This document shows positions 5,312 to 55,631 of a DNA stretch of 64,000 nt, in pieces. The first letter of the stretch is position 1. Each line of letters begins with the position of its first letter. Under the pieces are notes generated by a model, which was given only the letters and a program-made list of their open reading frames with translations, did no database searches and was not told where the DNA came from. Both the position numbers and the translations under genes were made by a program. Location: the IMG/VR virus record IMGVR_UViG_3300007352_000001, positions 1 to 64,000 of that record. One strand, 5' to 3'.

Positions 5312-5839
5312 ATGCACATCAACGCCATCTTCCAGGCGCTCGTAGAAGCGCAGGCGAAGCCGCCATGCTGTGCCAAGATCTCGGATCCGCACGCATTGGA
5401 CGCACACATGATTCGTTTCCACCTCGGGAAGTCTCGCCACCAGACCTTCGAGCCTGATGCGGACTGGCGCACGGACAAGATGGGCAAGACCGCACCGGGA
5501 GCGCGCCAAGCACTCGACCGGTCCGAGCTAGGCGCCCCGTGGAAGCGCGCCCACGTGCCGATCGCGCAGTTCATGGATCGGCCTGCGCACGCACCGTCGT
5601 GTTGCACGCGCCCGAGCGATCACAGCTTTCGCATCAACGGTATCGACCACTGGGTGCGTCGCCGGCACAAGGGCGACGTCCAGCAAGCGTTGCGTCAGAA
5701 CCCTGTCGTGCTGGCCCAGAAGCCGGATGGGCAGCTCGACCTCGTCGACGGGTACCATCGCACGTTGCACGCCCAGGCCAAGGGGCACACGCACGTGCCA
5801 GCCGTCATCGTCCGCTCCACTGTCAACCGGTCATGGTGA
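5312..5839 (+). CDS. ParB/sulfiredoxin-like domain protein, His-rich
   Basis: NPVVL...LVDGYHR....AKG.THVPAVIV; N-terminal FQALVEA. Confidence 0.75.
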   Translation: MHINAIFQALVEAQAKPPCCAKISDPHALDAHMIRFHLGKSRHQTFEPDADWRTDKMGKTAPGARQALDRSELGAPWKRAHVPIAQFMDRPAHAPSCCTRPSDHSFRINGIDHWVRRRHKGDVQQALRQNPVVLAQKPDGQLDLVDGYHRTLHAQAKGHTHVPAVIVRSTVNRSW

Positions 5840-5842
5840 CGA

Positions 5843-6133
5843 ATGCCTGCCTCGGTGAGCTACATGGCCCTGGAGCGGGATAACCCGCGCCAATGGGATC
5901 CCGCGCAGTTGCTGCGCAAGCTGCTCGAAGACATCGAAGACGGGGAGTTCCACCCCGACAAGATGGTGATCGTCTGGAACGAGCAGCCGAAGGACGGCCC
6001 GTCCGGGATCCGGCCGCGCGTTGCGTACGCCGGCACCGAAGGGTATGAGGCTCTCGGCGTGATGCGGCTCGCCATGTGCGACATGGAGCACGGGCTGCTC
6101 GCGCAACAGCAAGCCAGTGAGGATGACGAGTGA
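5843..6133 (+). CDS. hypothetical protein
   Basis: Tightly packed ORF, overlaps the next gene. Confidence 0.6.
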   Translation: MPASVSYMALERDNPRQWDPAQLLRKLLEDIEDGEFHPDKMVIVWNEQPKDGPSGIRPRVAYAGTEGYEALGVMRLAMCDMEHGLLAQQQASEDDE

Positions 6134-6834
6134 GGGTGTCGTTCACGACATCATGGCCGATCACCACGAAGTCGGCGGCGGCGAACTACATGGCGCAAGC
6201 GCTGCGGGCCGAAGAGGACCTGAGCCTGTTCCAGCGTGGACTGCAGTTCTGGCTCACGCTCGGTAGTCCGTACAAGTCCACGCGCATGCCGACCATCACG
6301 CCGATCCAACGCGGCAGCACCGTCACGCCCGACGCGATCGAACAGTTCATCCGGCACGTCGAGTGCACCAAGGGTCAAGAGCGCCTCGCCGATGATGAGC
6401 CGTACGGCAACGCCACCAAGCCCAGTACGCCGCGCGCGTCGGCGGGGACGGTGGACCTGCGCGAGTGTGCCGGACCCAACCCGACGATCGCGATCCGCAT
6501 CGAGCACGGCCCCGTCTTGTGGGAGACCGGCTGGTACGAAGGCCGCGTCGGCTACACGAGCCGCAAAGAGCACCGGTGGGACAAAGGACTCACTGGGGAA
6601 GACGTCAGAGTCTCGCGCCGCCGGCAAGGGGTGGTCTACAACTTCGCGTGCCCCTCGTGCAGCGCTCCGGCCGATCCTTGCCAGACGCTTCGCAACGGTG
6701 GGCACCAGGGCGCGTGCATGAACCGGCACCTCTACCAGGTCTGTCGTCTGCACTTGCGGGCCGAGGCCGGCCACTCGATCACCGAGTTCGATGCGGACAC
6801 GTGCTCGTGCTGGATGCCGCGGCGCTACGCGTGA
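6130..6834 (+). CDS. hypothetical protein with C-terminal Cys/His cluster and VLWETG...GRVGYTSR module
   Basis: GTGA overlap; CPSC..C..C..C..H..C.C. Confidence 0.55.
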   Translation: MRVSFTTSWPITTKSAAANYMAQALRAEEDLSLFQRGLQFWLTLGSPYKSTRMPTITPIQRGSTVTPDAIEQFIRHVECTKGQERLADDEPYGNATKPSTPRASAGTVDLRECAGPNPTIAIRIEHGPVLWETGWYEGRVGYTSRKEHRWDKGLTGEDVRVSRRRQGVVYNFACPSCSAPADPCQTLRNGGHQGACMNRHLYQVCRLHLRAEAGHSITEFDADTCSCWMPRRYA

Positions 6835-7004
6835 TGACGCACCCCACCACCGTCTGCGACCAGGCGTCGCACGTGAACTGCGGTTGCCTGCTCTCTACTC
6901 CAACACGGGGTGAAGAGCCGAGCTTCATGGCCGAGATCCGAGCGGTAGACGCGTACTTCGATCGGCCGCGCTGGTGGCATCGCTTCTGGCCATGCCGTCG
7001 CTGA
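6834..7004 (+). CDS. small hypothetical protein
   Basis: TGATG coupling with the upstream gene. Confidence 0.35.
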   Translation: MTHPTTVCDQASHVNCGCLLSTPTRGEEPSFMAEIRAVDAYFDRPRWWHRFWPCRR

Positions 7005-7799: not shown

Positions 7800-7803
7800 C
7801 GTG

Positions 7804-8613
7804 ATGATACCGCGCGGACGCGCCGGCTACGAGTCGACCCCACGCCCCACGCCAGAAGGCAAAGCGGTGCGGCGCTTCGGCGCTCGGATGGCGAAGACCG
7901 ACCGGTGGGCAAACAAGCCCAGCAACAAGGTCGCCTATCAGTACGGCGACGGGATGGCGAAGCACTTCGAGCGGCCGGCACCCTACTTCCAGCATCAGCC
8001 GACCGGCCTCTACGTCCAGCAGCATTCCACGGTGATGGGCACCGACACGCGCCTGACCGGTGACGTGCAGTACTCGGTGCCGGGCATGGGACGCCTCGCG
8101 GTGATCAAACACGACGAGCTGCGTCCCGCCCCGCATGGCATGGACGTGCTGGCGGCGGCTCGGCACAACCGCACGATGACGCGTGGCGCGAAGTGGCCGG
8201 GGCCGGTTGGCCGGCTGGACTATCTCACGCGCAAGCACGAAGGGATCAACGTGCGCTGGGACGACATCCTCGCCGAGGCGTTGAAGAAGTCCTCACCGCT
8301 GCTCGGCAAGACCACCAACATGTTCGGGCCGACCTCGCAGAGCCCCGATGTCCACCAGCGCCTGCGCGCGGTCCTCAGCAACCCGACGCACGACACCTGG
8401 GACAACGCCCACGGCATCGTCGTCTCGCAACATGGAGGCCTCGGCGGCACGACCCTCTGGCAAGCGGTGCTGGCGGTCGACCCGAGCTTCCCGAACGTCG
8501 GTCCCCGGTCCGATGCGTCTGGTCGACGGTTGAAGGGGTGGGATCGAATCCCGGATCAAATGACGTTGGCGCGAGCGATCAAGCACGCCACGTCGCTCAA
8601 GCCGCGGCGCTAG
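7804..8613 (+). CDS. two-domain hypothetical protein
   Basis: AAGGAG RBS; N-terminal IPRGRAGYES; internal WDDILAEA linker. Confidence 0.65.
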   Translation: MIPRGRAGYESTPRPTPEGKAVRRFGARMAKTDRWANKPSNKVAYQYGDGMAKHFERPAPYFQHQPTGLYVQQHSTVMGTDTRLTGDVQYSVPGMGRLAVIKHDELRPAPHGMDVLAAARHNRTMTRGAKWPGPVGRLDYLTRKHEGINVRWDDILAEALKKSSPLLGKTTNMFGPTSQSPDVHQRLRAVLSNPTHDTWDNAHGIVVSQHGGLGGTTLWQAVLAVDPSFPNVGPRSDASGRRLKGWDRIPDQMTLARAIKHATSLKPRR

Positions 8614-8757
8614 TCGCGGCGGGTCTCACTGCGGTCTCTGCGGCGAAAACGTCACCGCACGATCACCGGCAGTTCACGGGTGCGGTGCTACCGACGGGAG
8701 AGGTACGCGCATGCAGCCGGGAGAAAGGGGGTTGGTCGCGAGTCTGCGGAGTGAGCG

Positions 8758-10562: not shown

Positions 10563-10564
10563 AG

Positions 10565-13892: not shown

Positions 13893-14237
13893 ATGCCATT
13901 AACGGTCCGCGATTGGAACGACGATGCGTCCGGATTCTACGCCGTAGATCACCGTCATCCCTTTGCCGCACCGTCCTACGTCGCTCGGGACGCACCACCG
14001 CCCGCCGGCTACGCCGCCCGGCACGTGCTGTCCTTCATGCGAGATGCTCAGATCGTGGCCACGGCCGAGCTGACCGTGGCCGAAGGCGTCTGCCATATCA
14101 GCTTCCTGACGTCCAGCGTGGGCGTCCAGCCGCTCCTGCGGCGCTTCCGTCAACTCTTCCCCGATGTTCGGACCTTCCGCGGCACGCGCAGCGGTGGGAT
14201 CCGCACGGGCTACCACGAGGTCCTTGCGCATGCGTGA
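13893..14237 (+). CDS. hypothetical protein
   Basis: Divergent from the minus operon; overlaps the next gene. Confidence 0.5.
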   Translation: MPLTVRDWNDDASGFYAVDHRHPFAAPSYVARDAPPPAGYAARHVLSFMRDAQIVATAELTVAEGVCHISFLTSSVGVQPLLRRFRQLFPDVRTFRGTRSGGIRTGYHEVLAHA

Positions 14238-14949
14238 TTGGCTCACCGAGGCGCGCCAGTTCCTGCCCTCGCGGGAGCGGCCCGTCGTGAACATGGAGAA
14301 GGGCGATACCTTCTTGCACCCGAAGCACGGCCAGCTGACGCGCCGGGAGACCGACGCGCTGCAGTTCCGCGGGGCGGACGCGATCCAGCAGATCCGCCGA
14401 AGCCCTGACGTGCACGGCAAGACGGGCAACGTCGACTGGATGGCGCTGCACAAGACGGCCACTGACTTCGGCTACCGCACCCGCTCGGTTTCCAAGGGGG
14501 TGCGCGCTTACGAGCATCCGCAGCTGCGCCACTCGCTCAAGATCTTCTACAACGACCCCTCGAACGACGCCTGGGCGTTCATCGCGGGCCGGCACCGGGT
14601 CGATCACAAGCGCGGCGCTGACGCCTGCCAGATTGGGTACTCGAACGAGGACCTCGGCACCTACCTCGCGCACGTGCACACGGCCCACGCTGAGGGCGGC
14701 AACCACCCCGAACTCTGCCAGCACACCGACCCACGCAAGCGGGGGATTCGGATCGACGTCGGCGAGTCGCGCTTCGCGCACCTGATCGACGCCGTGCTGA
14801 TCGAGCGCAGCCGCCACGGTGTCGGTGATGCGAAGCTCCACCACCAACACTCGCGGTGGTACGCCGCGCGCCCAACGCGCACCCGCGCACACCCCCTGCA
14901 GCAGTCCGACGCGTACCACAGCGGCTACGGGTACGGCGATGCACACTAA
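14230..14949 (+). CDS. His-rich hypothetical protein (candidate internal head protein)
   Basis: N-terminal MRDWLTEA; internal FAHLIDAVLIE; many His. Confidence 0.6.
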   Translation: MRDWLTEARQFLPSRERPVVNMEKGDTFLHPKHGQLTRRETDALQFRGADAIQQIRRSPDVHGKTGNVDWMALHKTATDFGYRTRSVSKGVRAYEHPQLRHSLKIFYNDPSNDAWAFIAGRHRVDHKRGADACQIGYSNEDLGTYLAHVHTAHAEGGNHPELCQHTDPRKRGIRIDVGESRFAHLIDAVLIERSRHGVGDAKLHHQHSRWYAARPTRTRAHPLQQSDAYHSGYGYGDAH

Positions 14950-20640: not shown

Positions 20641-22344
20641 ATGTCACTCTTTCGTAGGGCGGGGCACGCTGCCTGGATCGCTCCGTCCGGCGAAGTGCAC
20701 CCGCTCGACACCAACGAAGGCCACTGGCTCTGGGTGGAGAAGAATCGGCACCGGATTCCGGAGTCGCTCCATCGCCCGACCGCGGAGCAGACCGGCTACA
20801 ACATGATCCAGCGCGGCTGGATTCGTCAGGCAGCGCCGAACGCGTACCACATCGGCCGGCCGCAGGACGTCCGCCGCGTGCGCGATCACGTGCTCATGCA
20901 CCATCCGAAGCTGAAGACGGTCTTCGTCGATCAGATGGGCGGGCCGTCACGTGAGGTGGATGTGCACGAAGATCTCGAAGGGCTTGCTCAAGCGCGTGCC
21001 GCCACGCACCCGGCGCCGAGCGAGGCGCAGAAGCGCGCGGGCAACTACGCCAAGGGCAAGGTGCAGCTGCACGGGATGACGATCGCCATCGAGAACGCCA
21101 GGGGCTCGCTGCGCACCGGCGTCTCGAAGGCCGGAGTGCGCTGGTCGAACCGGATGAAGCACGACTACGGCTACATCCTGGGCACGCTCGGCAAGGACAA
21201 GGATCATCTCGACGCGTTCGTCGGACCGCACCACGAGTCGGAGCTGGTGCACGTCATCGACCAGTACCGTCCCGACAGCGGCGCCTTCGACGAGCACAAG
21301 ATCGTCTTCGGGGCGCGGTCAACAGCTGAGGCCAAGGACATCTACCACTCCAACTACGCGAAGGGGTGGAAAGGGCTGGGACACATCACGCCGATGCACG
21401 TCACCGAGTTCAAGGCCTGGTTGGCGCACCACAACACGATGAGCCCGATGCACGCACAGCGCCGCGCGCCGCACGACACCTTCCGCACGGTGCGCGAGGC
21501 GATCGCCGCCGTCGCGGACGGTGTCGCCCCGGCCGACGTCATCGAGTCAGGTTGGGACGATGCGGTCTATCTGCGTGGCCGGCACGGCGCGTGGCTGAGC
21601 CCGCGCGGGAACTTCCACCCGCTCCAGCGTGGCGAGCTACACAAGGACTGGGTGCACTCGCACGCCAAAGAGCTGGGCGTGAAGGTCCCCAAGCGTCCGG
21701 GCCGCACCGCACCAGGCATGGGCGACACCACCGAGGTCGAGCATGATCTTCTGCGCTCGGGCTGGGTGAAGAAGTCCGACGCCACGACGTACGAGGCGCA
21801 CTCGGCTGAGCCGCGCGTGCTGCGCAGTATCCGGCAGCACATGCGCGAGTATCACCCCGACGAGTCGCACTTCGCGTTGCAGGTCGGCAAGGTCGGGGCC
21901 GGCGCCACCGGTCACTACCTGCCGGTCTGGGAAGGCCTCGACGAGGGCGACGTCATCCGTCCGCCGGTGGCCTGGTGGAACGATCCAGTGCGCATCAAGT
22001 TGCCGATGAAGGGACAGGTGGTGCCGATCAGTCACGGCGTGCATGGCCGGACGCCCCGGCCGACCGCGACCCCCATTGACCCCGTTGCGTTCGAGAAGGG
22101 CGTTGCCAAGCTCCGCGGAGTCCGTGCGGCGCTCGACCACACTGAGCTGAGCCACCGCTCGAAGCTGCCGTGCCCGCAGTGCAAGGGGCCGACCTCCATG
22201 CGCGTGACGCGCCGCGCCACGATCCACACGTGCAAAGACGGGTGGTGCAAGCACGAGTTCACCAAGCCGCTCGCGGAAGAGCGCGAGCGCGATGCTGTCG
22301 CCGAGTGGCATCGTCGCCTCAAGCAAGCTCTCGGACAGGAGTGA
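20641..22344 (+). CDS. polyvalent-type multidomain protein: W-x-x-P-x-G domain, inorganic-pyrophosphatase-like domain, helical tag, second W-x-x-P-x-G domain, zinc ribbon
   Basis: PSEAQKRAGNYAKG...IEN..GS.R.G...DYGYI.GT.G.D.DHLD.F...FDEHK matches the polyvalent-protein InPase domain. Confidence 0.8.
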   Translation: MSLFRRAGHAAWIAPSGEVHPLDTNEGHWLWVEKNRHRIPESLHRPTAEQTGYNMIQRGWIRQAAPNAYHIGRPQDVRRVRDHVLMHHPKLKTVFVDQMGGPSREVDVHEDLEGLAQARAATHPAPSEAQKRAGNYAKGKVQLHGMTIAIENARGSLRTGVSKAGVRWSNRMKHDYGYILGTLGKDKDHLDAFVGPHHESELVHVIDQYRPDSGAFDEHKIVFGARSTAEAKDIYHSNYAKGWKGLGHITPMHVTEFKAWLAHHNTMSPMHAQRRAPHDTFRTVREAIAAVADGVAPADVIESGWDDAVYLRGRHGAWLSPRGNFHPLQRGELHKDWVHSHAKELGVKVPKRPGRTAPGMGDTTEVEHDLLRSGWVKKSDATTYEAHSAEPRVLRSIRQHMREYHPDESHFALQVGKVGAGATGHYLPVWEGLDEGDVIRPPVAWWNDPVRIKLPMKGQVVPISHGVHGRTPRPTATPIDPVAFEKGVAKLRGVRAALDHTELSHRSKLPCPQCKGPTSMRVTRRATIHTCKDGWCKHEFTKPLAEERERDAVAEWHRRLKQALGQE

Positions 22345-22346: not shown

Positions 22347-23822
22347 GTGAACCCAGGAGTGCGCCTCGCCATCGACTTCGCCACGCAAGGCACGCCGGTG
22401 AGCGTGCTCGCCGAGGCGCTCATCAACGAGATCACCAAGGGCCATCTGAGCGCCCTCATGGCGCACGACCCGCACGCCCTCATCTACCACCCGCAGATCG
22501 AGCAGGGCGGGGAGCGCGAGACGATCGACTGGCACACGCGCAAGAAGCGCAACCCCGGCGAGGACGTCACCCGCTACACTGACGATCTCCGTCCCGAGGT
22601 CCGTGCGCAGTTCCGCTCGCCGAAGGAAGGGGCGTACCGCAAGACCGACCTGACGGTGGTGAAGGCGCACATGGGCCACCCGCTCTACTCGCGTTCCGCG
22701 GTGGCCCCCAACCTCCACGGCAAGCCGAGCGGCCGGCCGGCGCCGTCGATCTCCGGGGAGCACCTCGACTTGATGACGCACGCGGCCAAGGGCCAGGCGG
22801 AATCGCGTCACTGGTACGAGCACATCGCGCCACACGTGCAGCGGATCTTCGACTCTCCGCACTACAAGGACTCACACATGATCATGGGCCTGCTGGCGGC
22901 GTACTCGCCGCAGACCCACCCGCACCCGAACGTCCACAAGGCACTGCGTGGCTGGCGCGATCTGATCCAGGGCAAGCCGCTGATCGGCTCGCACTCGGAC
23001 AACACCAACGCGCTGCGCGCCGCGCATGGGATGCACCTCTCGGGGCCGAAGGTCCACTGGTACAACCGCAACATGCAGCACGGCATCACGCCGACGGCGA
23101 CGACGCCGACCGGGGATCCGATCGGCTCGGTCGACCACCCGACCAACGATCGGCACATGAAGTACGCCTTCCTGCGCGACTACGACGACGAGACGGTGCA
23201 CCCAGAGCAGCACGTCGCGATCACGCAGGCGACGCGGCACGTCGCCAACAAGCTCGGCTGGGGCCAGCACCAGGCGCAGGCCGCGGTGTGGGCGCACGAC
23301 ATCCGTACCACGGGCCTGAACGATCCGTCGTTCCACACGCCGGGCTCGCCGTTCAAGAAGCTCTCGCAGCGCTACGGGGGCTACCTGCCGGTTGTCGACG
23401 ACAAGAAGCCGATCCAGGACTACGGCCAGTTCTTCCGCGAGAACGAGCACGCGCTGCGCGGCATGAAGCACGAGATGGATCAGTACCGCATGTACCACCC
23501 GAACTACCGTGAGCACGCTGGCAAGGGGACGCCGTTCCTCTTCCACCCGGCAGGTATTCGCGGCGCGGCGATCAAGTACGGCCACGAAGTCTCGGCCGAG
23601 CACTTGTCGAACGCGCGCGAGGGGAAAGCGGTCCTCACCGATCTGAAGAATCGCGACATCACCCGCACCGATCCCAAGTCGGGATGGGAGATCGGCCCGA
23701 CTTCCGGCGCCTTCACCGGTCGGAAGAAGGATGTCGTGCGGCCGAACGTGTCGTTCGTGCACCCGACGCAGAAGCGCGTCACCCGCAAGGACCTCAAGAA
23801 CCTGGAACCGGCACCGTTCTGA
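22347..23822 (+). CDS. His-rich protein with N-terminal helical tag and HhH-glycosylase-like (DUF7178-like) domain
   Basis: HWYE, LLAAYSPQ, LSGPKV, DRHM, AQAAVW motifs in order. Confidence 0.6.
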   Translation: MNPGVRLAIDFATQGTPVSVLAEALINEITKGHLSALMAHDPHALIYHPQIEQGGERETIDWHTRKKRNPGEDVTRYTDDLRPEVRAQFRSPKEGAYRKTDLTVVKAHMGHPLYSRSAVAPNLHGKPSGRPAPSISGEHLDLMTHAAKGQAESRHWYEHIAPHVQRIFDSPHYKDSHMIMGLLAAYSPQTHPHPNVHKALRGWRDLIQGKPLIGSHSDNTNALRAAHGMHLSGPKVHWYNRNMQHGITPTATTPTGDPIGSVDHPTNDRHMKYAFLRDYDDETVHPEQHVAITQATRHVANKLGWGQHQAQAAVWAHDIRTTGLNDPSFHTPGSPFKKLSQRYGGYLPVVDDKKPIQDYGQFFRENEHALRGMKHEMDQYRMYHPNYREHAGKGTPFLFHPAGIRGAAIKYGHEVSAEHLSNAREGKAVLTDLKNRDITRTDPKSGWEIGPTSGAFTGRKKDVVRPNVSFVHPTQKRVTRKDLKNLEPAPF

Positions 23823-25536: not shown

Positions 25537-25719
25537 ATGCCCACCACGCATGAGCTAGCCGACCAGCTGCTCGACGCCATCGACAACGGCATGCCCGTCG
25601 ACGAAGCGGTCGAGGCCGCGATCAACGAAGCGCCCGCCAAGGGTCCGCGTATGATCCGGTTCGGCACGAGCAAAGAGCGCCTCGGCGCTCGCCCGATCGC
25701 ACAAGCACGCCAGCAGTAA
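25537..25719 (+). CDS. small protein made mostly of the helical tag
   Basis: AAGGAG RBS; LLDAIDNGMPVDEAVEAAINE. Confidence 0.65.
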   Translation: MPTTHELADQLLDAIDNGMPVDEAVEAAINEAPAKGPRMIRFGTSKERLGARPIAQARQQ

Positions 25720-25729: not shown

Positions 25730-26314
25730 GTGGCGGTGGTGTGGCGGCGGTTTCTCATTCTTGCGCTACTCGTGTGCCCACGGCTCGCCCTGGGTGGTGA
25801 GCTGTACTTCGACCCGGCTGGTGCGATCCTCGACGACTGCGCCACGACGCTGAAGGGCGCGTCTACAGCCGCGCGCATCGCCGCCGTCGACTGTCCGTAC
25901 GTCAACGGCACGCAGCGCACGTTTTACTACGCCACCTGGTGGCCGGCCGGCGCGGGCGTGAACTGGACGCCGAAGGTCACCCACCAGACCAGCGCCACCG
26001 GGCGCGTGTGCTGGCGAGTACAGGCGACGGCACTGGCCGGTGCAGGCGCCTCGGGAAAGAGCCTCAACGACCTCACCTTCAGCGGCGGCGCGCTCTTCAA
26101 CACGAACTTCGCCTCGGCGAACGTATCGCTGGCAGTGACCGGCTCGTCGTTCACTCCGAAGCAGGGCGACGGGACCACCGACTGCAGCACGGTCACCTGC
26201 GCGGGCGCGCGAGTGCTGGTCAAGGTGCAGCGCGAGATGGACGACGGCAGCTGTGCGGCGACGCAGTCTGCGGTCACCGCGAACTTCCAAGGGCTGCTGC
26301 TCACGCATGACTAA
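25730..26314 (+). CDS. Cys-rich beta protein with signal peptide (paralog of the next gene)
   Basis: RRFLILALL..ALG signal; GELYFDP..CP..FYY..WT..GRVC. Confidence 0.7.
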   Translation: MAVVWRRFLILALLVCPRLALGGELYFDPAGAILDDCATTLKGASTAARIAAVDCPYVNGTQRTFYYATWWPAGAGVNWTPKVTHQTSATGRVCWRVQATALAGAGASGKSLNDLTFSGGALFNTNFASANVSLAVTGSSFTPKQGDGTTDCSTVTCAGARVLVKVQREMDDGSCAATQSAVTANFQGLLLTHD

Positions 26315-26897
26315 GTGGGCAGCGCTCGCCGTGTTCCTCTGGGCGAGCGCCGCGGGAGCGGGCGAGTACTACTTCGAGCCCGGCCAAGGACTCGTTGACG
26401 GCACGTGCAGCCGGAATGTTCGCGGCACTGGCGCCGAGCCGCGCACGCTGGTCCTCACCTGCCCCGACCATACCAGCAGCAACTTCTTCTACTACAACTT
26501 CTCGTACCCCGAGTCGGTCGGGGCTGGGTGGTCGCACATCTGGACTGGATCCTTGCAGTTTGAAGCCGTGGCACCTGGCCGCGTGTGCTTCTCGTTCTCC
26601 TTGTGGGTCATTGACGAGACGGTGCAGTCGCTCAGCAACCTGTCCCCGACGACGTTTGTGTCCTTCGCGACGCGGACCGTCTCGGCCGGTGAGGTGAACC
26701 AGACGCTCAGTGTGCCGATTGCGACGCTGCTCACCACGTTCGGTCAGAACTCCATCCCGGTTGGCTGCAACACGAACGATTGCCGCCGCCGTCGCGCCGT
26801 ATTGCGCATCGGCCGCGCGCCCAGCGCGTCGTGTGCGCCTGGACCAGCGAACACCGGTGCCATCGACCTTCAAGGGATTCGCTTGCGGTTCGACTGA
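26307..26897 (+). CDS. Cys-rich beta protein with signal peptide (paralog of the previous gene)
   Basis: MTKWAALAVFLWASAAGA signal; GEYYFEP..CP..FYY..WT..GRVC. Confidence 0.7.
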   Translation: MTKWAALAVFLWASAAGAGEYYFEPGQGLVDGTCSRNVRGTGAEPRTLVLTCPDHTSSNFFYYNFSYPESVGAGWSHIWTGSLQFEAVAPGRVCFSFSLWVIDETVQSLSNLSPTTFVSFATRTVSAGEVNQTLSVPIATLLTTFGQNSIPVGCNTNDCRRRRAVLRIGRAPSASCAPGPANTGAIDLQGIRLRFD

Positions 26898-31988: not shown

Positions 31989-32402
31989 ATGAGTGGAGCG
32001 ACTTCGTTCGCCCAGCTGGTCGCGGCCCACATGGACGGGATGCACCCGACGTCTGTCGTCGAGAGCATGCTGGGTCCGGATCGCACGGACGACTTCACCA
32101 GTGACGACGTGCGAGCCCGCGAGTTCACCCGCATCGCCTCGCAAGCAGCGTCGGCCTTCCCGTACATCGGGCCGGACTGGATCGGCACGATCGCGCAGGC
32201 AGTCCGCCAGGCTGATGCGCAGGGCATGCAGGAACTCGTCCGCATGTCTACCCAGAACCGTGATCAGTATGCGGGCACCGCCCGCATCGACTCTGACGGG
32301 TCGTTCGCGCTCTGGGACGCGATTCTCAAGGGGCTGCTCGCGGTGCCGACCACCCAGCTGCCGCCGCCCGCCCCGCCGCTGAACACGGCCCCGCTTCCGT
32401 AA
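31989..32402 (+). CDS. hypothetical protein with N-terminal helical tag
   Basis: AGGAGG RBS; FAQLVAAHMDGMHPTSVVES. Confidence 0.7.
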   Translation: MSGATSFAQLVAAHMDGMHPTSVVESMLGPDRTDDFTSDDVRAREFTRIASQAASAFPYIGPDWIGTIAQAVRQADAQGMQELVRMSTQNRDQYAGTARIDSDGSFALWDAILKGLLAVPTTQLPPPAPPLNTAPLP

Positions 32403-34683: not shown

Positions 34684-36294
34684 ATGTCGGATCCCGTTAC
34701 CTCCCCGCTCCTGCTGGAGGAGACGCGCATCTTCACGCCCCAGATCGTGGAGCGCGCAACGCCCGGTGGTCGTCTGCGACTGCAAGGCATCTACCAGCTC
34801 GGCGAGGTCGTCAACCAGAACAAGCGTCGGTACCCGAACCCGCTCTGGGATCGGTTGCTGGGGGAAGGTTCCGCGTTTCAGAACCGCGTCCGCGCTCGCC
34901 GTGTACTCGGCGAACTCGGGCACCCCAAGGACGGCAAGACGCTCCTCGAACGCGTCTCGCACCTGATCACCAAGACCTGGATCGACCCCAACGGGCGGCG
35001 TGACTGTCTCGCCTGCGAGCAGAGCCTCAACCCCGGCCACTACCACGTCATGGCCGAGGAAGAGGTGCTCAACACGCCGCACGGGAAGATCCTGGGCGAA
35101 CTCTACGAAGCTCAGGTCGAAACCGGCGTTTCCTCGCGTGGCCGCGGCACGCTCGTCCCGATGGGCGAGTACTCCAACGTCAACGACGACTACGCCATGG
35201 AGACCTTTGACCACGTGCTCGATCCGAGCACGCCTGGTGCGATGCCGCGCGTCGTGTCCGAGAACGTCGTCGGCGTCATCTCCCGCTTCGCCAACTGCGA
35301 CGCCACCCCTGCGGAACTGCAGGGGTACCGTTCCATCCTGGCTGAGGTGACCGAATCGGCCGCGCCCGAGATCCGTTCCAACGCCCACGCGGTGATGGAA
35401 GCGATCGAGGTGCGTCTTGCCAACGCGAGTCGTGGACAGGTGCAGTGCTCGGTGCCGGCGTCGGCACCCCTGCTGCACATGTCCGACAGTGATTCTCGCG
35501 TCGAGTCCCCTCTCGCCGCAACCCCAACCCTGGAGGCACGCATGACCATCACCAAGGACCTGCCCGAGGTCCGTGCGATTGTCGCCGAGGCCGTCCGCGA
35601 GCACGAGGCATCGCTCCGCACGCAGTTTGACACCGCCATGTCCGAGATGGTCGCGACGGTGGAGAGCCTGCAGCAGGAGCTGCTCGCGTCGCAGCAGCGC
35701 AATGAGGCTGCTGACCTCGTCGGCAATGAGCTGGTCTCCCAGCTCAAGGAAACGAATCTGAAGCTCACGGCGTACTCGACCGCGAACAGCGGTGGGCATG
35801 ACGTGCTGCAGAAGTTCGACACCGCCAAGGGCGTGATCGAGGAACTCATCGAGCACGTCCGCAGCCTGCGCTACGCCGAGGCCCGCGCCGATGCGGCCGA
35901 GCGTCTCCTCTCCGAGGTGGTCGCTCGCACGCAGCGCGAGCATCTGATGGCGCACGTCGACCGCCTGCTCCAGGTGGTCCCCGAAGAGCACGTCGGCCGC
36001 GTGAAGCCGTTCCTCACCGAGGCGAGCAGCATCGCCGAGGCGAACCGTCGCTTCTCCACCGTCACCGCCGCGCTCATCACCGAGGCGCCGGAGACCGAAC
36101 AGCCGGCCGCGGTGCGTACCGACGGCGCACTCCCGCCGACCGCGGGACACCACGCCGCCGCCCTCACCGAGTCGACCACGCTCGTCGGCACTCCTACCCA
36201 GGGGACGCAGGCCGGGCAGCAGGTCAACGAGAGCGTGAACATCACCCGCGCGATGGTGCGCCGGCTGTCCGGCCGCACCGCCGTCGGCGCGTAA
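34684..36294 (+). CDS. gp21: T4 gp21-type prohead protease fused to a scaffold-like coiled coil
   Basis: NQNKRRYP, GELGHP, LNTPHGKI, GVSSRGRG, FDHVLDPST; coiled-coil C-terminal half; directly upstream of the capsid gene. Confidence 0.9.
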   Translation: MSDPVTSPLLLEETRIFTPQIVERATPGGRLRLQGIYQLGEVVNQNKRRYPNPLWDRLLGEGSAFQNRVRARRVLGELGHPKDGKTLLERVSHLITKTWIDPNGRRDCLACEQSLNPGHYHVMAEEEVLNTPHGKILGELYEAQVETGVSSRGRGTLVPMGEYSNVNDDYAMETFDHVLDPSTPGAMPRVVSENVVGVISRFANCDATPAELQGYRSILAEVTESAAPEIRSNAHAVMEAIEVRLANASRGQVQCSVPASAPLLHMSDSDSRVESPLAATPTLEARMTITKDLPEVRAIVAEAVREHEASLRTQFDTAMSEMVATVESLQQELLASQQRNEAADLVGNELVSQLKETNLKLTAYSTANSGGHDVLQKFDTAKGVIEELIEHVRSLRYAEARADAAERLLSEVVARTQREHLMAHVDRLLQVVPEEHVGRVKPFLTEASSIAEANRRFSTVTAALITEAPETEQPAAVRTDGALPPTAGHHAAALTESTTLVGTPTQGTQAGQQVNESVNITRAMVRRLSGRTAVGA

Positions 36295-36333: not shown

Positions 36334-37860
36334 ATGATCACTGCCAATCTGGTGGAACAGACGAGTGGTCGTGGCCTGAGCGACAACTTCCTGTCGCTGG
36401 GTCGCGTCCTCTCCGAGGAGCGCTGGGCCGACTACTGCAACGACCCCGAGATCCCCATCGCAGAAGACGCGACCCGCTACGGTCTCGCGTGCATGCTGGA
36501 GAATCTCGATCGCTTCCTCGGTCAACTCGACGAGACCACGCGCGCGGTCGCGATCGGCGACTTCCAGAAGTACGCCTTCCCCCTCGTCCGCGCCATCTTC
36601 CCTGAACTCGTCGCGAACAGCCTGGTGTCGGTGCAGCCGATGCTCGGCCCCACGAGCCTGATCTTCTACCTGGACTTCGTCTACGGGACGAACAAGGGCT
36701 CGGTGCGTCGCGGTGACACCGCCTTCTCGGCGGTGGCGCGCGGCCCGAACAACCCATCGTACACCTCGCCGAACGTCGACGAGGAGCAGGTCGCGACTGG
36801 CGACGGCACCACGGTGGCGTTCACCGCGAACATCTCCTTCACCCCGATCGTTCCGTCCTCGATCGTCATCACCGACGGCATCCAGGTCGTGACCGACAAC
36901 GGGGCGGGCGGTGTGACCGGCGACGCGTCGGCCGGCTCGGTCAACTACGCCAACGGGTCGCTGGCCGTCACCTTCAGCTCGGCGCCGTCGTCGGGCACCC
37001 CGATCACCGTGTCGTACACGTACGACATGGAAGCCAACCCCCTCCTGCCGGAGATGGACCTGGTGCTGCAGAGCACCCCGGTCATGGCCCGGCCGCGCAA
37101 GCTCAAGACCAAGTGGTCGCTGGAGGCGGCGTTCAACCTCCGCTCGCTGCATGGTCTGGAGGCTGAGGTCGAGTTGACTTCGGCCGTCGGCAGCGAGATC
37201 CGCTTCGAGATCGACCGCGAGGTCATTCTCGATCTGCAGAAGCTCGCGGGCGCGGGCTCGGTGTTCTGGAACAAGGACCTGCCGCAGGGCGTGTCCTTCA
37301 CCGAGCAGAAGCTGTCGATCATCGACACCTTCGTCACCGCCTCGAACCTCATCCACAAGACGACTGGTCGCGGCACCGCCACCTGGATCCTCGGTGGCGA
37401 GGGCGTGGCCAACGTCATCGAGACTCTGCCCGGCTTCGTGCCGACGCCGGGTCTCCCGAGCGGTCTCGTCAAGGGCGTGTACCGCGCGGGCCGTCTGAAC
37501 GGGCGCTGGGACTTCTTCAAGGACCCGTTCTACACGGACAACTTCTTCATGATGGGCTACAAGGGCATGAGCTTCCTGGAAGCCGGCTACGTGTACGCCC
37601 CGTACATCCCGCTCTACACCACGCCGACGATCGTCCTGGACGACTTCATCGCGCGCAAGGGTCTCGCCACGCAGTACGGCAAGAAGGCGGTGAACCCGCT
37701 CTTCTACGTCACCGGTGAGGTCGACCGCGGTCTCGCTCTGGAGACCAAGGCTGGTGTCGCCGCGGGCACCATCTCGTCGAGCGGTCAGGCCGTCCTGACC
37801 CACGGTTCGGCGAAGGAAGACCTCGGCCTGGCAACGGGCCGCGGCGTCTTCGGCATCTGA
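36334..37860 (+). CDS. gp23: T4 gp23-type major capsid protein
   Basis: LVSVQPMLGPTSLIF, RKLKTKWSLEAA, EIRFEIDREVI, AGYVYAPYIPL, KGLATQYG. Confidence 0.96.
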   Translation: MITANLVEQTSGRGLSDNFLSLGRVLSEERWADYCNDPEIPIAEDATRYGLACMLENLDRFLGQLDETTRAVAIGDFQKYAFPLVRAIFPELVANSLVSVQPMLGPTSLIFYLDFVYGTNKGSVRRGDTAFSAVARGPNNPSYTSPNVDEEQVATGDGTTVAFTANISFTPIVPSSIVITDGIQVVTDNGAGGVTGDASAGSVNYANGSLAVTFSSAPSSGTPITVSYTYDMEANPLLPEMDLVLQSTPVMARPRKLKTKWSLEAAFNLRSLHGLEAEVELTSAVGSEIRFEIDREVILDLQKLAGAGSVFWNKDLPQGVSFTEQKLSIIDTFVTASNLIHKTTGRGTATWILGGEGVANVIETLPGFVPTPGLPSGLVKGVYRAGRLNGRWDFFKDPFYTDNFFMMGYKGMSFLEAGYVYAPYIPLYTTPTIVLDDFIARKGLATQYGKKAVNPLFYVTGEVDRGLALETKAGVAAGTISSSGQAVLTHGSAKEDLGLATGRGVFGI

Positions 37861-50037: not shown

Positions 50038-50057
50038 GGCACAGGAGAATAGGCACG

Positions 50058-50321: not shown

Positions 50322-50330
50322 GGTGAGGGC

Positions 50331-52966: not shown

Positions 52967-53199
52967 CCGACGACTTCGACGACGTCCCGGAGTTGAACAG
53001 CCTCCCGAAGCTCGACATCGAGTTCGCCCCGCCGGTGAAGCGCCGCTCGCGGCGACTCGACGGCTGGACGCACCAAGACAGACCCTTGCGTGTCGAGGGC
53101 GTCGCCCCACCAGCAATCGACCGGCGCAAGCCGTTGCGCCGCGGACAAGTCGGCTACGCCTCGCGTGGCCGGCGCAAGAGGACGATCGACGATGCGTGA
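52963..53199 (+). CDS. small protein with GQVGYASR motif; apparent ATA start
   Basis: In-frame ATA overlaps the upstream TAA (ATAA); fills the gap exactly. Confidence 0.4.
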   Translation: MTDDFDDVPELNSLPKLDIEFAPPVKRRSRRLDGWTHQDRPLRVEGVAPPAIDRRKPLRRGQVGYASRGRRKRTIDDA

Positions 53200-53707
53200 T
53201 GTCTCCGCGGCGATCAGTGCGATTCTCGACGGCGCGGCCGTGCCGGTGATCGCCGAGGCGATGATGCGCATGGGCATGGGTGCCCCGCCGCCGGTCAACA
53301 CCGGCGCCACCGGCGAAGCCGAGGATCGCAAGCACGCCGCGTGGATCGAGCCCAACGGCCGTACGCACGTGCTCGGCAGGGAAGAGATTCACGGCGACTG
53401 GGCCACGGCACGGCCCGAGATGTGGCCCAAGCGAGCGTACGCGGTCTACCGCGCCGCGGCCGGCCGCGGCGACGACACCTACCACGACGAATCGCGGCAA
53501 ATGAGCCGCATGATGAAGGCCGGGTGGGTGCGCAAGGCTGGCGCCGCCGCGTACCACGTCCACGCCCGCGAGCAGATCCCACGGGTCCTCGCCCACGTGC
53601 GCCGCTGGCATCCAGACGTCGACGAGTTCCATGTCGACGTCGGCTCGCCGAAGATCAAGACGACGGTCACGATGAACGCGCACACCGGGTGGCCGGTGCG
53701 GAGGTAG
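53192..53707 (+). CDS. helical tag plus W-x-x-P-x-G domain protein
   Basis: AAISAILDGAAVPVIAEA; AWIEPNG...H..W...AGWVRK. Confidence 0.7.
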   Translation: MRDVSAAISAILDGAAVPVIAEAMMRMGMGAPPPVNTGATGEAEDRKHAAWIEPNGRTHVLGREEIHGDWATARPEMWPKRAYAVYRAAAGRGDDTYHDESRQMSRMMKAGWVRKAGAAAYHVHAREQIPRVLAHVRRWHPDVDEFHVDVGSPKIKTTVTMNAHTGWPVRR

Positions 53708-53715
53708 ACTGACTC

Positions 53716-55266
53716 ATGCCCATGGACGCTTCGCCCTACCAAGCTCAAGGACCGGGTGACCCGAGCGCAGGCGCGGGGCCTCCGGCGTCGCAGAATCCGC
53801 CGCCGCCAGGCCCACCACAGGTCCCTGGGGCGCCGGATCCGCGCATGCAGCCGTTTGGGCAGCAGGCGTCGCCCGGCAACTTCCTGCAGCAGATCCGACA
53901 GTTCTCGGCGGACTGTGCCCAGGTCGAAGAGATCGTCACCGAGCTGCAGAAGCTCCTGCTGCAGATCAAGATGTCGATGCCGCCCGATCGCGTCGAGGCC
54001 ACGACCCAGGCGATGGGGCAGCTGCTCGCGGCGCAGTCTGGGCTCACCGGTGCTCGCATGGTGCTGGAGATGGCCACGATGCCGCAGCAGCAAGCCGGTG
54101 CCGGCGGTGGCGGTGTGCGAGAGGACAAGACGCCCGAGCCGACGACGTTCACCGCGCTTGTCGAACAGGCGGGCAAAGCAAAGTTCGGCCTGCCTCATGC
54201 GCCGCGGCGCTACACCTGCCAGGACTGCGGCCAAGAGCAGAAGATCTCGACCAACCACACCGACGACGTATCGGACTACTGCCGCGGCTGTTCGTGGAAG
54301 CCGTCGTTCGGCAAGACGGGCCACAACATCCCCGCGCTCGGTGGGCATACCTACCGCCGCTTCTCCTACGTCGGTGAACTGAAGGAATCCGCCGATGACA
54401 TCGAGCGCACGCTCGGGGTTGGTCGCTACGCTCGGCCGCAGACCGCCGCTGATCGCAAGCTCATCCGCGACTTCCTGGCGCCGAACACGACGGCAACGGC
54501 AGATGCATGGGCACGCCGGCCGGCCGGTCCGGTGACCACGCACGCCCGCTCGCCGTTCCAGCTGTCGATCCAGAAGACCGCCCTCGGGAAGAAAGGCGGC
54601 GTGCACGAAGCGCTCGCGACGACCTCGCACCACATGAGCGGGGGCGGTGGCACCGCGACGCAGACGCTCACCATCCCTGAGCGCGAGTACCAGATCCGCG
54701 AGTTCACTGACGGGCCGGTCACCCGTTACGAGCTGTCGCGCATCGGCAATGACCTACGGGCGCAGGTGCCGATCTACGTGTTCCATGACCAGAAGACCGG
54801 CGCGTGGAAGTCGACGCTTTTCCAGGAAGACGACGGAGGCGGCGATCGCCACGCCGAGCTGGTGAAGCGCTGGCTCTTCCAGGGCCGGCCGGCACGCATC
54901 ACCGACGCCATGGAACCGGTTGGCGGCTCGCCGCCAGCGTGGCCGTTCATGGACAACGACGGCTACGAGCGGCCAGGCTTCCACTCGACCCAGCGGCCGG
55001 TGGGAATCCCCGATCCAGGTCCGGGCCAGGGGCACTATGCCGAGTCGTCGTTCGGCGCGCTTGTTGACGAGACCAAGCGGTTCTCGAAGAGCGAGGTGGT
55101 GGCGTCGCTGCGCCAGCACGCACAGGACATCCGCGACGGCAAGATCAAGACGCGCTCGCCGAACGATGAGCCGCACACCATCATTGGCCCCGACGGCAAG
55201 CCGCACATCCCTCGTGGCCGTGTCGGGGCTGCCTCGCGCGTGCGCGTGAAGAAAGGCCGCGTATGA
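53716..55266 (+). CDS. multi-module protein (Pro/Gln-rich N-terminus, zinc ribbon, FxALV[DE] linkers, C-terminal GRVGAASR)
   Basis: GGAGG RBS; CQDC...CRGC; VRED, LKES, VHEA linkers. Confidence 0.7.
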   Translation: MPMDASPYQAQGPGDPSAGAGPPASQNPPPPGPPQVPGAPDPRMQPFGQQASPGNFLQQIRQFSADCAQVEEIVTELQKLLLQIKMSMPPDRVEATTQAMGQLLAAQSGLTGARMVLEMATMPQQQAGAGGGGVREDKTPEPTTFTALVEQAGKAKFGLPHAPRRYTCQDCGQEQKISTNHTDDVSDYCRGCSWKPSFGKTGHNIPALGGHTYRRFSYVGELKESADDIERTLGVGRYARPQTAADRKLIRDFLAPNTTATADAWARRPAGPVTTHARSPFQLSIQKTALGKKGGVHEALATTSHHMSGGGGTATQTLTIPEREYQIREFTDGPVTRYELSRIGNDLRAQVPIYVFHDQKTGAWKSTLFQEDDGGGDRHAELVKRWLFQGRPARITDAMEPVGGSPPAWPFMDNDGYERPGFHSTQRPVGIPDPGPGQGHYAESSFGALVDETKRFSKSEVVASLRQHAQDIRDGKIKTRSPNDEPHTIIGPDGKPHIPRGRVGAASRVRVKKGRV

Positions 55267-55631
55267 GCTTCCAACGGCTCGTCGACCAAGTCATCGAGTC
55301 TGACAAGGACCCGTCGCACGCCAAGGCGCCGTCGCTCGGGCAGATGAGCAGTCAGTTCTCCTCGCGCTTGCGGATGCCAGGGAAGATGCCACGGCTCGGC
55401 AGCCTCCGGCCTGGTACGGGCCGCGCGCTCCCGCTCGCCAACCTCCGACCACAGTTGCACCAGGGCCAGCACGCGATCCACGGCCCTGGGGACCTCAAGC
55501 CGAAGTTCCGTTTCCACTCGCAAGCGATCGCCGGGCGCGTCGCGCAACTCCTCTCGATGCGCTCGAAACAGAAGCACGAAGTCCGGTTGAGTCCAGTGGC
55601 GCAGCGCCATCCTTTCGCGCCAACGGGCTAA
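55263..55631 (+). CDS. basic protein with N-terminal MSFQRLVDQVIES
   Basis: ATGA coupling. Confidence 0.6.
   Translation: MSFQRLVDQVIESDKDPSHAKAPSLGQMSSQFSSRLRMPGKMPRLGSLRPGTGRALPLANLRPQLHQGQHAIHGPGDLKPKFRFHSQAIAGRVAQLLSMRSKQKHEVRLSPVAQRHPFAPTG

What the first reader, a model, noticed from the sequence alone, without database searches (positions are those of the whole stretch)
5312..55301. Second, shorter F-x-x-L-[VI]-[DE] tag resembling the T4 capsid-targeting sequence
Seen: MHINAIFQALVEA (5312, before a ParB-like domain), VRWDDILAEA (about 8251), MRDWLTEA (14230), SRFAHLIDAVLIE (about 14767), TTFTALVEQA (about 54142), ESSFGALVDET (about 55042) and MSFQRLVDQVIES (55263). They sit at N-termini or between modules. 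Known: the T4 CTS is a 10-aa aromatic/hydrophobic helix ending in Glu (MKTYQEFIAE). Inference: a minimal variant of the packaging or cleavage tag.
Basis: partly seen in the sequence, partly recalled or inferred. Interest (0 to 1): 0.6.

Follow-up and report, generated by a model that had tools for sequence, protein, structure and literature searches.

The report
N-terminal capsid-tag-like leader in jumbo phage
Most of the seven listed peptides are chance look-alikes, but one (the start of gene 5312-5839) belongs to a real 12-residue N-terminal leader shared by unrelated small basic proteins in a rare group of T4-like giant phages, and it most likely directs them into the capsid before being cut off, as T4's capsid-targeting sequence does.

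Summary
The window is the first 64 kb of a complete 241-kb, 65% GC T4-like jumbo myovirus (gp23-type capsid protein, gp21-type S77 protease, sheath). All seven peptides exist, but as a set they are not a feature. Two do not fit the stated motif. Enrichment vanishes under multiple testing and motif relaxation. Internal copies score at shuffled-proteome level, and the two in g87 are not conserved in three homologues.

One instance is real. The g9 N-terminus carries a leader, M-x-[IF]-N-x-[TSI]-[FWY]-x-x-L-[LVI]-E-[AGES], with Glu at residue 12. The same leader heads unrelated proteins: g344 (235 kb), a 93-aa protein in contig L003, and three clustered head/neck-module genes in relative G001 (37.5% GC, so conservation is in the peptide). 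Leave-one-family-out HMMs separate all of them from the null.

The cargoes are basic (pI 9.5-11) and diverse (ParB/Srx-like, 2H phosphodiesterase, orphans). The leader is a detached helix ending in L-x-E, the T4 gp21 cleavage rule. In both G000 and G001 the protease protein is the most [LI]-x-E-rich protein of the proteome, but not [LI]-x-D-rich.

Best reading: a CTS analogue, that is, a capsid-targeting propeptide. Packaging and cleavage are inferred, not shown.

The parts
5312..5350 (+). Leader of g9: residues 1-13, M-H-I-N-A-I-F-Q-A-L-V-E|A, with the putative cut after Glu-12. This is the one solid member inside the window.
   Evidence: The ATG is the first codon after a stop. The orthologue P0005 keeps the leader with substitutions and has a 24-residue indel right after it. 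PSSM score is 27.4 bits against an internal maximum of 13.4. Left out of the HMM, the family scores 9.1/13.9 bits against a null of 6.9. In the model the leader is a helix at 3-12, followed by about 60 residues of very low confidence.
5312..5839 (+). g9, 175 aa: leader + low-confidence linker + C-terminal ParB/Srx-like domain (DGYHR motif). Basic cargo, pI 10.0.
34684..36294 (+). g54: prohead protease (Peptidase_S77, T4 gp21 family) with a roughly 300-residue C-terminal extension. It has L-L-E at residues 10-12 and 19 [LI]-x-E sites in all.
   Evidence: PF03420 scores 46.7 bits, above its cut-off. phrog_207 E 1.8e-33. [LI]-x-E: 19 against 4.9 expected, rank 1 of 354. [LI]-x-D: 1 against 4.6.
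36334..37860 (+). g55: major capsid protein (T4 gp23 family). The N-terminus MITANLVE has L-V-E at residues 6-8.
   Evidence: PF07068 E 1.7e-60. Relatives keep L-x-E near the N-terminus: G001 SLQE-9, G002 ALQE-11, distant relatives GELLE-G.
31989..32402 (+). g49: acidic 137-aa head-module protein. Its roughly 25-residue N-terminal module (F-x-x-L-V ... G-x-H-P-x-x-V-V-E|S) resembles the leader. It is a possible prohead-core protein with a propeptide.
   Evidence: Orthologues in G001 (52% identity) and L030 keep the module and the second Glu. The G001 orthologue is the best non-seed N-terminus for the leader HMM at 11-13 bits. g49 itself scores 7.7 bits.
55263..55301 (+). g88 N-terminus MSFQRLVDQVIES: a possible degenerate, shortened leader with V-I-E at residues 10-12. 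Cargo pI 12.
   Evidence: It scores only 1.2 bits by itself. Its orthologue P0007 in L003 starts M-I-N-D-T-Y-x-x-L-L and scores 7-11 bits, above the internal null in most runs.
54142..54171 (+). g87 residue 145 instance (TTFTALVEQA): chance-level and not conserved.
55042..55074 (+). g87 residue 446 instance (ends in Asp): chance-level and not conserved.
8251..8280 (+). g14 internal instance (VRWDDILAEA): it does not fit the stated motif and scores 5.0 bits, within the null.
   Evidence: No homologue was available.
14230..14253 (+). g26 N-terminus MRDWLTEA: it does not fit the motif or the leader (-15 bits).
14767..14805 (+). g26 residue 182 instance (ends in Asp): -5.5 bits, chance.

Best explanation
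The seven peptides are not one feature. Five of them (g14, both g26 sites, both g87 sites) are ordinary amphipathic-helix fragments that resemble each other by chance.

The g9 N-terminus is a true member of a short N-terminal leader, and g88 and the unlisted g49 may be diverged members. The leader is M-x-[IF]-N-x-[TSI]-[FWY]-x-x-L-[LVI]-E-[AGES]. A rare clade of T4-like jumbo phages attaches it to otherwise unrelated, mostly small and basic proteins.

Proposed mechanism, by analogy with the T4 capsid-targeting sequence:
- The leader forms a short acidic amphipathic helix with an aromatic residue at position 7.
- This helix docks the protein onto the scaffolding core while the prohead assembles.
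- The gp21-family protease g54 then cuts after Glu-12, at the L-x-E site.
- The basic cargo is freed inside the head and is delivered with the DNA at the next infection.

What is shown:
- The leader exists, is strictly N-terminal and is modular.
- It is conserved at the peptide level.
- It ends in L-x-E.
- The phage has T4-type head genes.
- The protease protein is specifically loaded with aliphatic-x-Glu sites.

What is inferred: binding to the core, cleavage, presence in virions and injection.
For: (1) The leader is real. A pattern taken only from g9 and its orthologue P0005 has 8 constrained positions. It is matched at 6/8 or better by none of 66,520 internal positions, but at 7/8 by the N-terminus of the unrelated g344, where 1.8e-4 such matches are expected. 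Leave-one-family-out HMMs give 9.1-22.2 bits for every left-out family, against 5.2-9.1 for the best internal segment. PSSM scores are 27-33 bits, against a shuffled-proteome maximum of 11.6 +/- 2.4.

(2) Conservation is in the peptide, not the DNA. G001 is 37.5% GC against 65% for G000, with a 67%-identical MCP. It carries three leader genes written in different codons. Upstream DNA is not shared between leader genes.

(3) The leader is modular.
- Cargo parts are unrelated by BLAST.
- There is an indel directly after the leader in g9 versus P0005.
- The G001_32938 cargo is a 2H-phosphoesterase domain with 511 homologues, and the match starts after the leader in nearly all of them.
- In that protein's model (pLDDT 95) the domain begins at strand 13-19, and the leader is a separate helix at 3-10.
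- Only its closest homologues have N-terminal extensions, and those also end in L-x-E-G.

(4) The T4 logic applies.
- Peptidase_S77 and gp23-family MCP are present.
- All 8 core leaders end in L-[LVI]-E followed by a small or acidic residue.
- T4 gp21 cuts after L/I-X-E. The T4 CTS is a 10-residue N-terminal propeptide in which residues 4 and 7 drive targeting and residues 8 and 10 drive processing (PMC9026906).
- T4 Ip1-3 share only this leader (PMC12373910, PMC3012670).
- T4's own N-termini read LIE-6, LIE-9, IAE-9 and LRE-10.

(5) Protease specificity. g54 ranks 1 of 354 for [LI]-x-E (19 against 4.9). Its G001 orthologue ranks 1 of 110 (16 against 5.5). Both are also first for [VM]-x-E, but not for [LI]-x-D, [AGS]-x-E or the reversed motif.

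(6) Cargo pI is 9.5-11.0, against a proteome median of 6.3. Published T4 internal proteins are also basic.

(7) G001's leader genes sit inside the head/neck module.
Against: There is no experimental or proteomic evidence that any of these proteins is in a virion or is cleaved.

The leader has no sequence homology to the T4 CTS beyond an aromatic at residue 7 and a terminal Glu.

In G000 the two clear leader genes (g9 at 5.3 kb, g344 at 235.4 kb) lie among non-structural-looking genes, not in the head module. T4's ip genes are also scattered.

L-x-E is a short and common motif. N-terminal [LI]-x-E is only marginally enriched proteome-wide: 62 against 48.8, p=0.04.

Only four phage genomes or fragments carry the leader, so the number of independent cargo families is small: about 5 firm and 2-3 doubtful.

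No late-promoter signal could be used to time expression.

The complex prediction could not be run.
Confidence: 0.58

Rival explanations
1. The leader is a docking helix for some other shared partner and is not removed by the head protease. Candidate partners are a phage chaperone, a tail or baseplate site, a replication or nucleoid factor, or a host protein.
For: The leader is a detached amphipathic helix on diverse cargo. g9 and g344 lie outside the head module. Nothing shows cleavage.
Against: This does not explain why all eight leaders end exactly in L-[LVI]-E at residue 11-12 with a small residue after it. It also does not explain why the cargo is uniformly basic, or why three G001 copies sit in the head/neck module. 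The protease protein's specific [LIVM]-x-E load shows that this motif matters in these phages.
Confidence: 0.2
2. The leader is a piece of shared ancestry without a targeting role. In this view a gene-start cassette was spread by recombination between phage genes and is retained because it is harmless or helps translation initiation.
For: Short N-terminal identities can arise by recombination at gene starts. g343 and g344 are adjacent and both carry a copy.
Against: Upstream DNA and ribosome-binding regions are not shared. Codons differ completely between the 65% and 37.5% GC genomes, while the peptide pattern is kept. That indicates selection on the peptide.
Confidence: 0.1
3. One reading: the short F-x-x-L-[VI]-[DE] unit acts as a packaging or cleavage tag both at N-termini and at internal module boundaries (g14, g26, g87).
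For: The strict motif count is 5 in the window against 0.75 expected. In g87 both copies follow Gly/Pro-rich linkers.
Against: The enrichment is not robust to multiple testing or motif relaxation. Internal scores are within the shuffled null. The g87 sites are not conserved in three homologues, although neighbouring blocks are invariant. Asp-ending copies are unlikely substrates (PMC9026906). Two listed peptides do not fit the motif.
Confidence: 0.06
4. Everything, including the N-terminal leader, is a chance resemblance of amphipathic helices.
For: Pairwise, g9 against g344 scores only about 17 by BLOSUM62 over 10 residues. That is unremarkable among all N-terminal pairs.
Against: The orthologue-derived pattern test gives 1.8e-4 expected. 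Leave-one-out HMMs pick out every family. The leader recurs in a 37.5% GC relative at the same position, three times.
Confidence: 0.03

Closest known systems
T4 capsid-targeting sequence (CTS) of internal proteins IPI/IPII/IPIII (MKTYQEFIAE; Mullaney and Black 1996, as reviewed in PMC9026906; PMC12373910)
   Same: Both sit at the extreme N-terminus and are 10-12 residues long. Both have an aromatic at residue 7 and end in the gp21 site L/I-x-Glu. Both are shared by otherwise unrelated small basic proteins. Both occur in a phage with a gp21-family protease and a gp23-family capsid protein.
   Different: There is no sequence homology. Here the leader has I-N at residues 3-4, is 12 residues rather than 10, and ends L-[LVI]-E rather than I-A-E. 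The clade is very distant from Tevenvirinae: sheath about 26-34% identical to any isolate, no nucleotide match in the phage collection. Cargo includes enzymes (ParB/Srx-like, 2H phosphodiesterase). Function is untested.
[quoted passage not shown]
   Same: The architecture and cleavage rule are the same. The MCP (LVE-8) and protease (LLE-12) of this phage have the same kind of N-terminus. T4 gp24 even shares the K-I-N-E string with the L003 leader.
   Different: Those T4 peptides belong to essential structural proteins and are not a shared transferable tag.
Propeptides of phiKZ / 201phi2-1 / SPN3US ejection and inner-body proteins (cleavage at S/A-x-E; SPN3US gp53/gp54 share an identical 15-residue N-terminus; PMC5694885, PMC10052503)
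   Same: These are giant phages with a gp21-related protease that cuts after Glu. Conserved N-termini occur on paralogous packaged proteins.
   Different: The P3 preference differs: small residues there, aliphatic here ([AGS]-x-E is not enriched in g54). Propeptides there are often over 100 residues long and occur on paralogues, not on unrelated cargo.

Membership tests
T4-type capsid-targeting sequence (functional class) | Located at the extreme N-terminus, about 10-20 residues long | tested here: met
   The leader starts at residue 2-3 of the first in-frame start codon in every member. Glu is at residue 11-12.
T4-type capsid-targeting sequence (functional class) | Shared by proteins that are otherwise unrelated | tested here: met
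   Cargo parts show no BLAST similarity between families. Folds differ: ParB/Srx-like against 2H phosphoesterase. The HMM recovers each family when it is left out.
T4-type capsid-targeting sequence (functional class) | Ends in the prohead-protease site (L/I-x-Glu, cut after Glu) | tested here: met
   8 of 8 core leaders end in L-[LVI]-E. The rule is taken from PMC9026906.
T4-type capsid-targeting sequence (functional class) | The phage encodes a gp21-family protease and a T4-type head | tested here: met
   PF03420 and PF07068 score above their cut-offs. The T4-type portal is at 173.7 kb.
T4-type capsid-targeting sequence (functional class) | Cargo are small basic internal proteins | tested here: met
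   Cargo proteins are 82-243 aa, with pI 9.5-11.0 after the leader, against a proteome median of 6.3.
T4-type capsid-targeting sequence (functional class) | Sequence homology to the T4 CTS MKTYQEFIAE | tested here: not met
   Only Met-1, an aromatic at residue 7 and a terminal Glu coincide. The T4 CTS was verified in NC_000866. This is therefore an analogue, not a homologue.
T4-type capsid-targeting sequence (functional class) | Necessary and sufficient for incorporation into proheads; removed in mature virions | not testable with these tools
   This needs virion N-terminomics or fusion experiments.
Peptidase_S77 (T4 gp21 prohead protease), for g54 | Match to the family profile above its curated cut-off | tested here: met
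   46.7 bits against a cut-off of 27. phrog_207 head maturation protease, E 1.8e-33.
ParB/Srx fold, for the g9 C-terminal domain | ParB N-terminal-domain fold with the DGxHR-type motif | tested here: inconclusive
   The top 50 Foldseek hits are ParB, Noc, sulfiredoxin, SbnI and KorB, but E is only 5e-3 and the domain pLDDT is about 70-80. A DGYHR motif is present. There is no Pfam hit at E<=1.

The most novel reading that the evidence does not exclude
The leader marks a set of pre-packaged, injected counter-defence proteins in an uncultivated clade of T4-like jumbo phages. These include a 2H phosphodiesterase of the Acb1 / phage-PDE type and a ParB/Srx-like protein. If so, the phage would deliver nucleotide-signal-degrading or DNA-directed enzymes together with its DNA, before any gene is expressed. 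The leader would then be a sequence handle for finding injected proteins in metagenomic phages, and a portable tag for loading foreign proteins into these capsids.
Probability: 0.25. Interest if true: 0.75.

Novelty: new variant of a known kind. Interest (0 to 1): 0.5.

Why it matters
T4's capsid-targeting sequence is the classic example of a portable peptide that loads arbitrary proteins into a phage head. It marks the injected anti-restriction proteins Ip1-3. Outside the T-even phages, such tags are hardly defined at the sequence level.

This report describes a second, unrelated leader that follows the same logic, in a very distant clade of T4-like jumbo phages spanning 37-65% GC. If it is confirmed:
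- The strategy would be shown to be old or recurrent.
- Packaged or injected proteins could be predicted directly from metagenomic sequence.
- Candidate early-acting counter-defence enzymes would be identified, including a 2H phosphodiesterase and a ParB/Srx-like protein.

The case also shows that a loose four-position motif picked by eye mixes one real signal with several chance matches.

Tried and rejected
- Nucleotide search of the phage collection found no match. Protein-level relatives of the sheath are 34% identical or less.
- Pfam and PHROGs gave no family for g9, g14, g26, g87, g88, g344 or P0006.
- The search for related loci with g87 and g9 in IMG/VR found nothing.
- An all-against-all comparison of N-terminal 10-mers showed no excess over internal segments. 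The leader is too short to be seen pairwise.
- The first IMG/VR DNA-pattern scan returned only internal Met sites in Mu-type portal genes, with Cys at the aromatic position.
- The second scan returned G001 (the positive control), one antisense ORF inside a sheath gene (L055), and a single conserved 102-aa family that is not modular.
- MCP-based metagenome loci at MCP identity of 49% or less, and L030, carry no leader within 10 kb of the MCP.
- The 'long N-terminal module' was tested as a possible parent of the short leader. The HMMs keep the two apart, and only about half of my hand-picked long-module seeds survive leave-one-out.
- The T4 late promoter TATAAATA is not enriched or positioned in G001: 12 on the plus strand against 17 on the minus strand, mostly inside genes. 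Expression timing could therefore not be inferred.
- N-terminal [LI]-x-E is only marginally enriched proteome-wide.
- A profile search of the 2H-like cargo against PDB sequences found nothing. Only the fold search identified it.
It was not run.

Full report
**What the window is**

The window is bases 1-64000 of a single 241,426-bp IMG/VR virus record. The record has direct terminal repeats and is judged complete. It is 65% GC.

A codon-usage/GC3 gene model gives 354 genes at 91% coding density, of which 97 lie in the window. The phage has these T4-type genes:
- a T4 gp23-family major capsid protein, g55, at 36334-37860 (PF07068, E 1.7e-60);
- a T4 gp21-family prohead protease domain at the start of g54, 34684-36294 (PF03420, 46.7 bits; phrog_207);
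- a T4-type portal far away at 173.7 kb;
- a gp15-like sheath stabiliser, a gpS-like tail-completion protein and a tail sheath.

No isolate is close. There is no nucleotide match in the phage collection, and the sheath is at most 34% identical to any isolate.

**The observation**

They lie in g9 (N-terminus), g14 (internal), g26 (N-terminus and residue 182), g87 (residues 145 and 446) and g88 (N-terminus). None of these proteins has a Pfam or PHROG family, and none is a paralogue of another.

The strict motif occurs 5 times in the window against 0.75 in shuffles, and 8 times in the genome against 3.0. This does not survive scrutiny:
- Among 1,128 motifs of the same architecture it ranks 4th in the window and 28th genome-wide.
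- Relaxing it to [FWY]..[LIVM][LIVM][DE] removes all window excess: 13 of 48 hits, exactly the window's share of residues.
- Only 2 of 14 F..[LI][VI][DE] hits are N-terminal.

**Conservation of the internal copies**

g87 has two syntenic homologues at about 40% identity (P0002 and P0003, with synteny) and a third in G001. Blocks next to the motif are invariant, but neither motif position is kept.

With a PSSM built from the true leaders (described below), the internal copies score 8.8, 5.0, -1.3 and -5.5 bits. Shuffled proteomes reach 11.6 +/- 2.4 bits. The numbers of windows above 8.8 and above 5.0 bits (4 and 19) match expectation (2.6 and 16).

The internal 'between-module' instances are therefore chance.

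**The real feature**

While mapping the related contig L003, I found a 93-aa gene whose N-terminus closely matches that of g9 at the same position. Further members followed:
- g9's only homologue, P0005 (62% identity), keeps the leader with conservative changes and has a 24-residue indel directly after it.
- A scan of every start codon in the genome found g344 at 235392-235652 with the same leader, plus an internal Met-led copy in the gene upstream, g343.
- g344's orthologue P0009 keeps the leader, and the L003 protein aligns with g344 at 29% identity.

The consensus is M-x-[IF]-N-x-[TSI]-[FWY]-x-x-L-[LVI]-E-[AGES], often followed by Pro 4-5 residues later.

Three tests avoid circular reasoning:
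1. I built a pattern from the g9/P0005 pair alone, with 8 constrained positions. It is matched at 6/8 or better by none of 66,520 internal positions, yet at 7/8 by g344's N-terminus, where 1.8e-4 such matches are expected.
2. In leave-one-family-out HMMs, every left-out family scores 9.1-22.2 bits. The best internal segment scores 5.2-9.1 bits.
3. All leader genes start at the first in-frame start codon of their ORF.

**A low-GC relative shows that the peptide is what is conserved**

An MCP search of IMG/VR found G001, an 81.8-kb fragment whose MCP is 67% identical but whose genome is only 37.5% GC. G001 has three leader genes (243, 135 and 95 aa) inside the head/neck module. It also has a leader-like N-terminus on the orthologue of window gene g49. 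The codons are entirely different while the peptide is kept. Upstream DNA is not shared between leader genes.

The leader was not found in these places:
- relatives with MCP identity of 49% or less, or the flanks of L030;
- anywhere else in IMG/VR, by two back-translated pattern scans.

It is therefore confined to a rare subclade.

**Modularity and cargo**

After the leader, the proteins are unrelated.

The g9 model is poor overall. It shows a helix at residues 3-12, then about 60 residues at pLDDT below 32, then a ParB/Srx-like domain.

G001_32938 is more informative:
- Its cargo matches phrog_36523 from residue 17 onward.
- It has 511 homologues in the 1.84-billion-protein library. The match begins at query residue 12-26 in nearly all of them.
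- Free-standing homologues start directly with the domain. Only the two closest have N-terminal extensions, and these also end in L-x-E-G.
- With a 40-sequence alignment the model reaches pLDDT 95. The domain starts at strand 13-19, and the leader is a separate helix at 3-10.
- The fold is 2H phosphoesterase: all top hits are of that class, including a phage phosphodiesterase and the anti-CBASS nuclease Acb1, and there are two conserved H-x-T motifs.

All core cargoes are basic after the leader (pI 9.5-11.0), against a proteome median of 6.3. The leader itself is acidic.

**Why a capsid-targeting propeptide is the best reading**

Published T4 work sets the criteria:
- gp21 cuts after Glu in L/I-X-E.
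- The CTS is the first 10 residues of IPIII. Residues 4 and 7 drive targeting, and residues 8 and 10 drive processing.
- Asp at P1 blocks processing.
- Diverse basic internal proteins share only this leader (PMC9026906, PMC3012670, PMC12373910).

T4's own record shows LIE-6 (gp67), LIE-9 (gp21), IAE-9 (gp22), LRE-10 (gp24) and LTE-65 (gp23). It also shows the CTS on three genes.

In this clade:
- every core leader ends in L-[LVI]-E at residue 11-12, with an aromatic at residue 7;
- the MCP starts with LVE-8 in G000, LQE-9 in G001 and LQE-11 in G002;
- the protease has LLE-12 in G000 and LTE-8 in G001.

The strongest indirect evidence on specificity is a proteome-wide ranking.
- g54 is the protein most enriched in [LI]-x-E out of 354, with 19 sites against 4.9 expected. 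That is 3.5 per 100 aa, against 3.3-3.75 for T4 gp21, gp67 and gp68.
- Its G001 orthologue ranks first of 110, with 16 against 5.5.
- Both also rank first for [VM]-x-E.
- Neither stands out for [LI]-x-D (1 against 4.6), [AGS]-x-E, aromatic-x-E or the reversed motif.

An aliphatic-x-Glu rule therefore appears to operate here.

**What remains inferred**

Nothing here shows that these proteins are in virions, are cut, or are injected. The leader is an analogue of the T4 CTS, not a homologue. In G000 the two clear leader genes lie outside the head module. L-x-E alone is a weak signal.

I put the CTS-like mechanism at about 0.55-0.6. That the leader is real is about 0.9 or higher. That the internal instances are chance is about 0.85.

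**Verdict**

The finding as written is mostly a false pattern. It did, however, touch one member of a real and previously undescribed N-terminal leader. That leader is a new variant of a known kind of system: T4-type capsid targeting and propeptide removal.

Noticed in passing
window 53192-53707 (g86), 25537-25719 (g41), 22347-23822 (g37); G001 17670, 19908; L003 4174-5613: A second, longer N-terminal module occurs on several otherwise different proteins. In leave-one-out HMM tests only about half of my hand-picked seeds pass (16-17.5 bits against a null of 10-13). It is distinct from the short leader.
   Followed up: partly
G000 234380-235315 (g343), residue 212; orthologue L010:1-432: An internal Met-led copy of the leader (M-K-E-D-V-N-A-T-W-x-Q-L-V-D-E) lies 100 residues before the end of g343, directly upstream of the leader gene g344. 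It has an AGGGG-like ribosome-site motif before the Met. This could be an internal start that makes a second tagged protein. By score alone (13.4 bits) it is within the shuffled null.
   Followed up: partly
window 34684-36294 (g54): The protease gene carries a roughly 300-residue C-terminal extension with 10 further [LI]-x-E sites. This looks like a fused, self-destructing scaffold or core segment. g54 is the most [LI]-x-E-rich protein of the proteome.
   Followed up: yes
G001 (IMGVR_UViG_3300000311_000002) versus G000: Two phages whose major capsid proteins are 67% identical differ by 27 points in GC content (37.5% against 65%). That is an unusually large compositional split within one phage lineage.
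   Followed up: no
G001 32938-33345 (L016:12938-13345): This leader-tagged cargo is a 2H phosphoesterase, with fold hits including Acb1 and a phage phosphodiesterase. The same domain also occurs embedded in giant 1,700-2,800-aa proteins in the protein library.
   Followed up: partly
window 20695-22344 (g36); 53192-53707 (g86); G000 239743-240864 (g353): g36 has an InPase domain (PF18823, E 8e-51). It matches PHROGs annotated as DarB-like antirestriction, minor head or virion proteins. A second region of g36 is paralogous to g86 and g353. These are candidates for large packaged proteins.
   Followed up: no
window 53716-55266 (g87) and homologues P0002/P0003: g87 has a Pro/Gln-rich N-terminus, a conserved helical segment and an invariant Cys-rich block (CxxC ... 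CxxC). It always sits just upstream of the gp15-like gene. Its longer homologues contain a twice-repeated unit, E-G-D-L-V-D-A-x-x-R-F-A-x-R-A, ahead of further CxxC modules. Function unknown.
   Followed up: partly
window 25736-26897, 27300-29036, 29440-31062; G000 220351-225226: Many phage proteins have signal-peptide-like N-termini. g42/g43 belong to a family of about eight tandem paralogues at 220-225 kb. g45 has a weak PQQ/beta-propeller hit, and g46 a weak beta-helix hit.
   Followed up: no
window 33565-34377 (g52): This head-module protein between the g51 (MCP-related) gene and the protease has several weak zinc-ribbon hits. That is unusual for a scaffold-region gene.
   Followed up: no
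IMG/VR loci L045-L096 (e.g. L073:6611-6916): A conserved 102-aa protein starting M-A-I-N-P-T-F-A-G-F-L-E-E-E-P is present in about 40 viral contigs of 35-57% GC. Its N-terminus resembles the leader, but it is one protein family and has no PHROG match. Any relation to the leader is unknown.
   Followed up: partly
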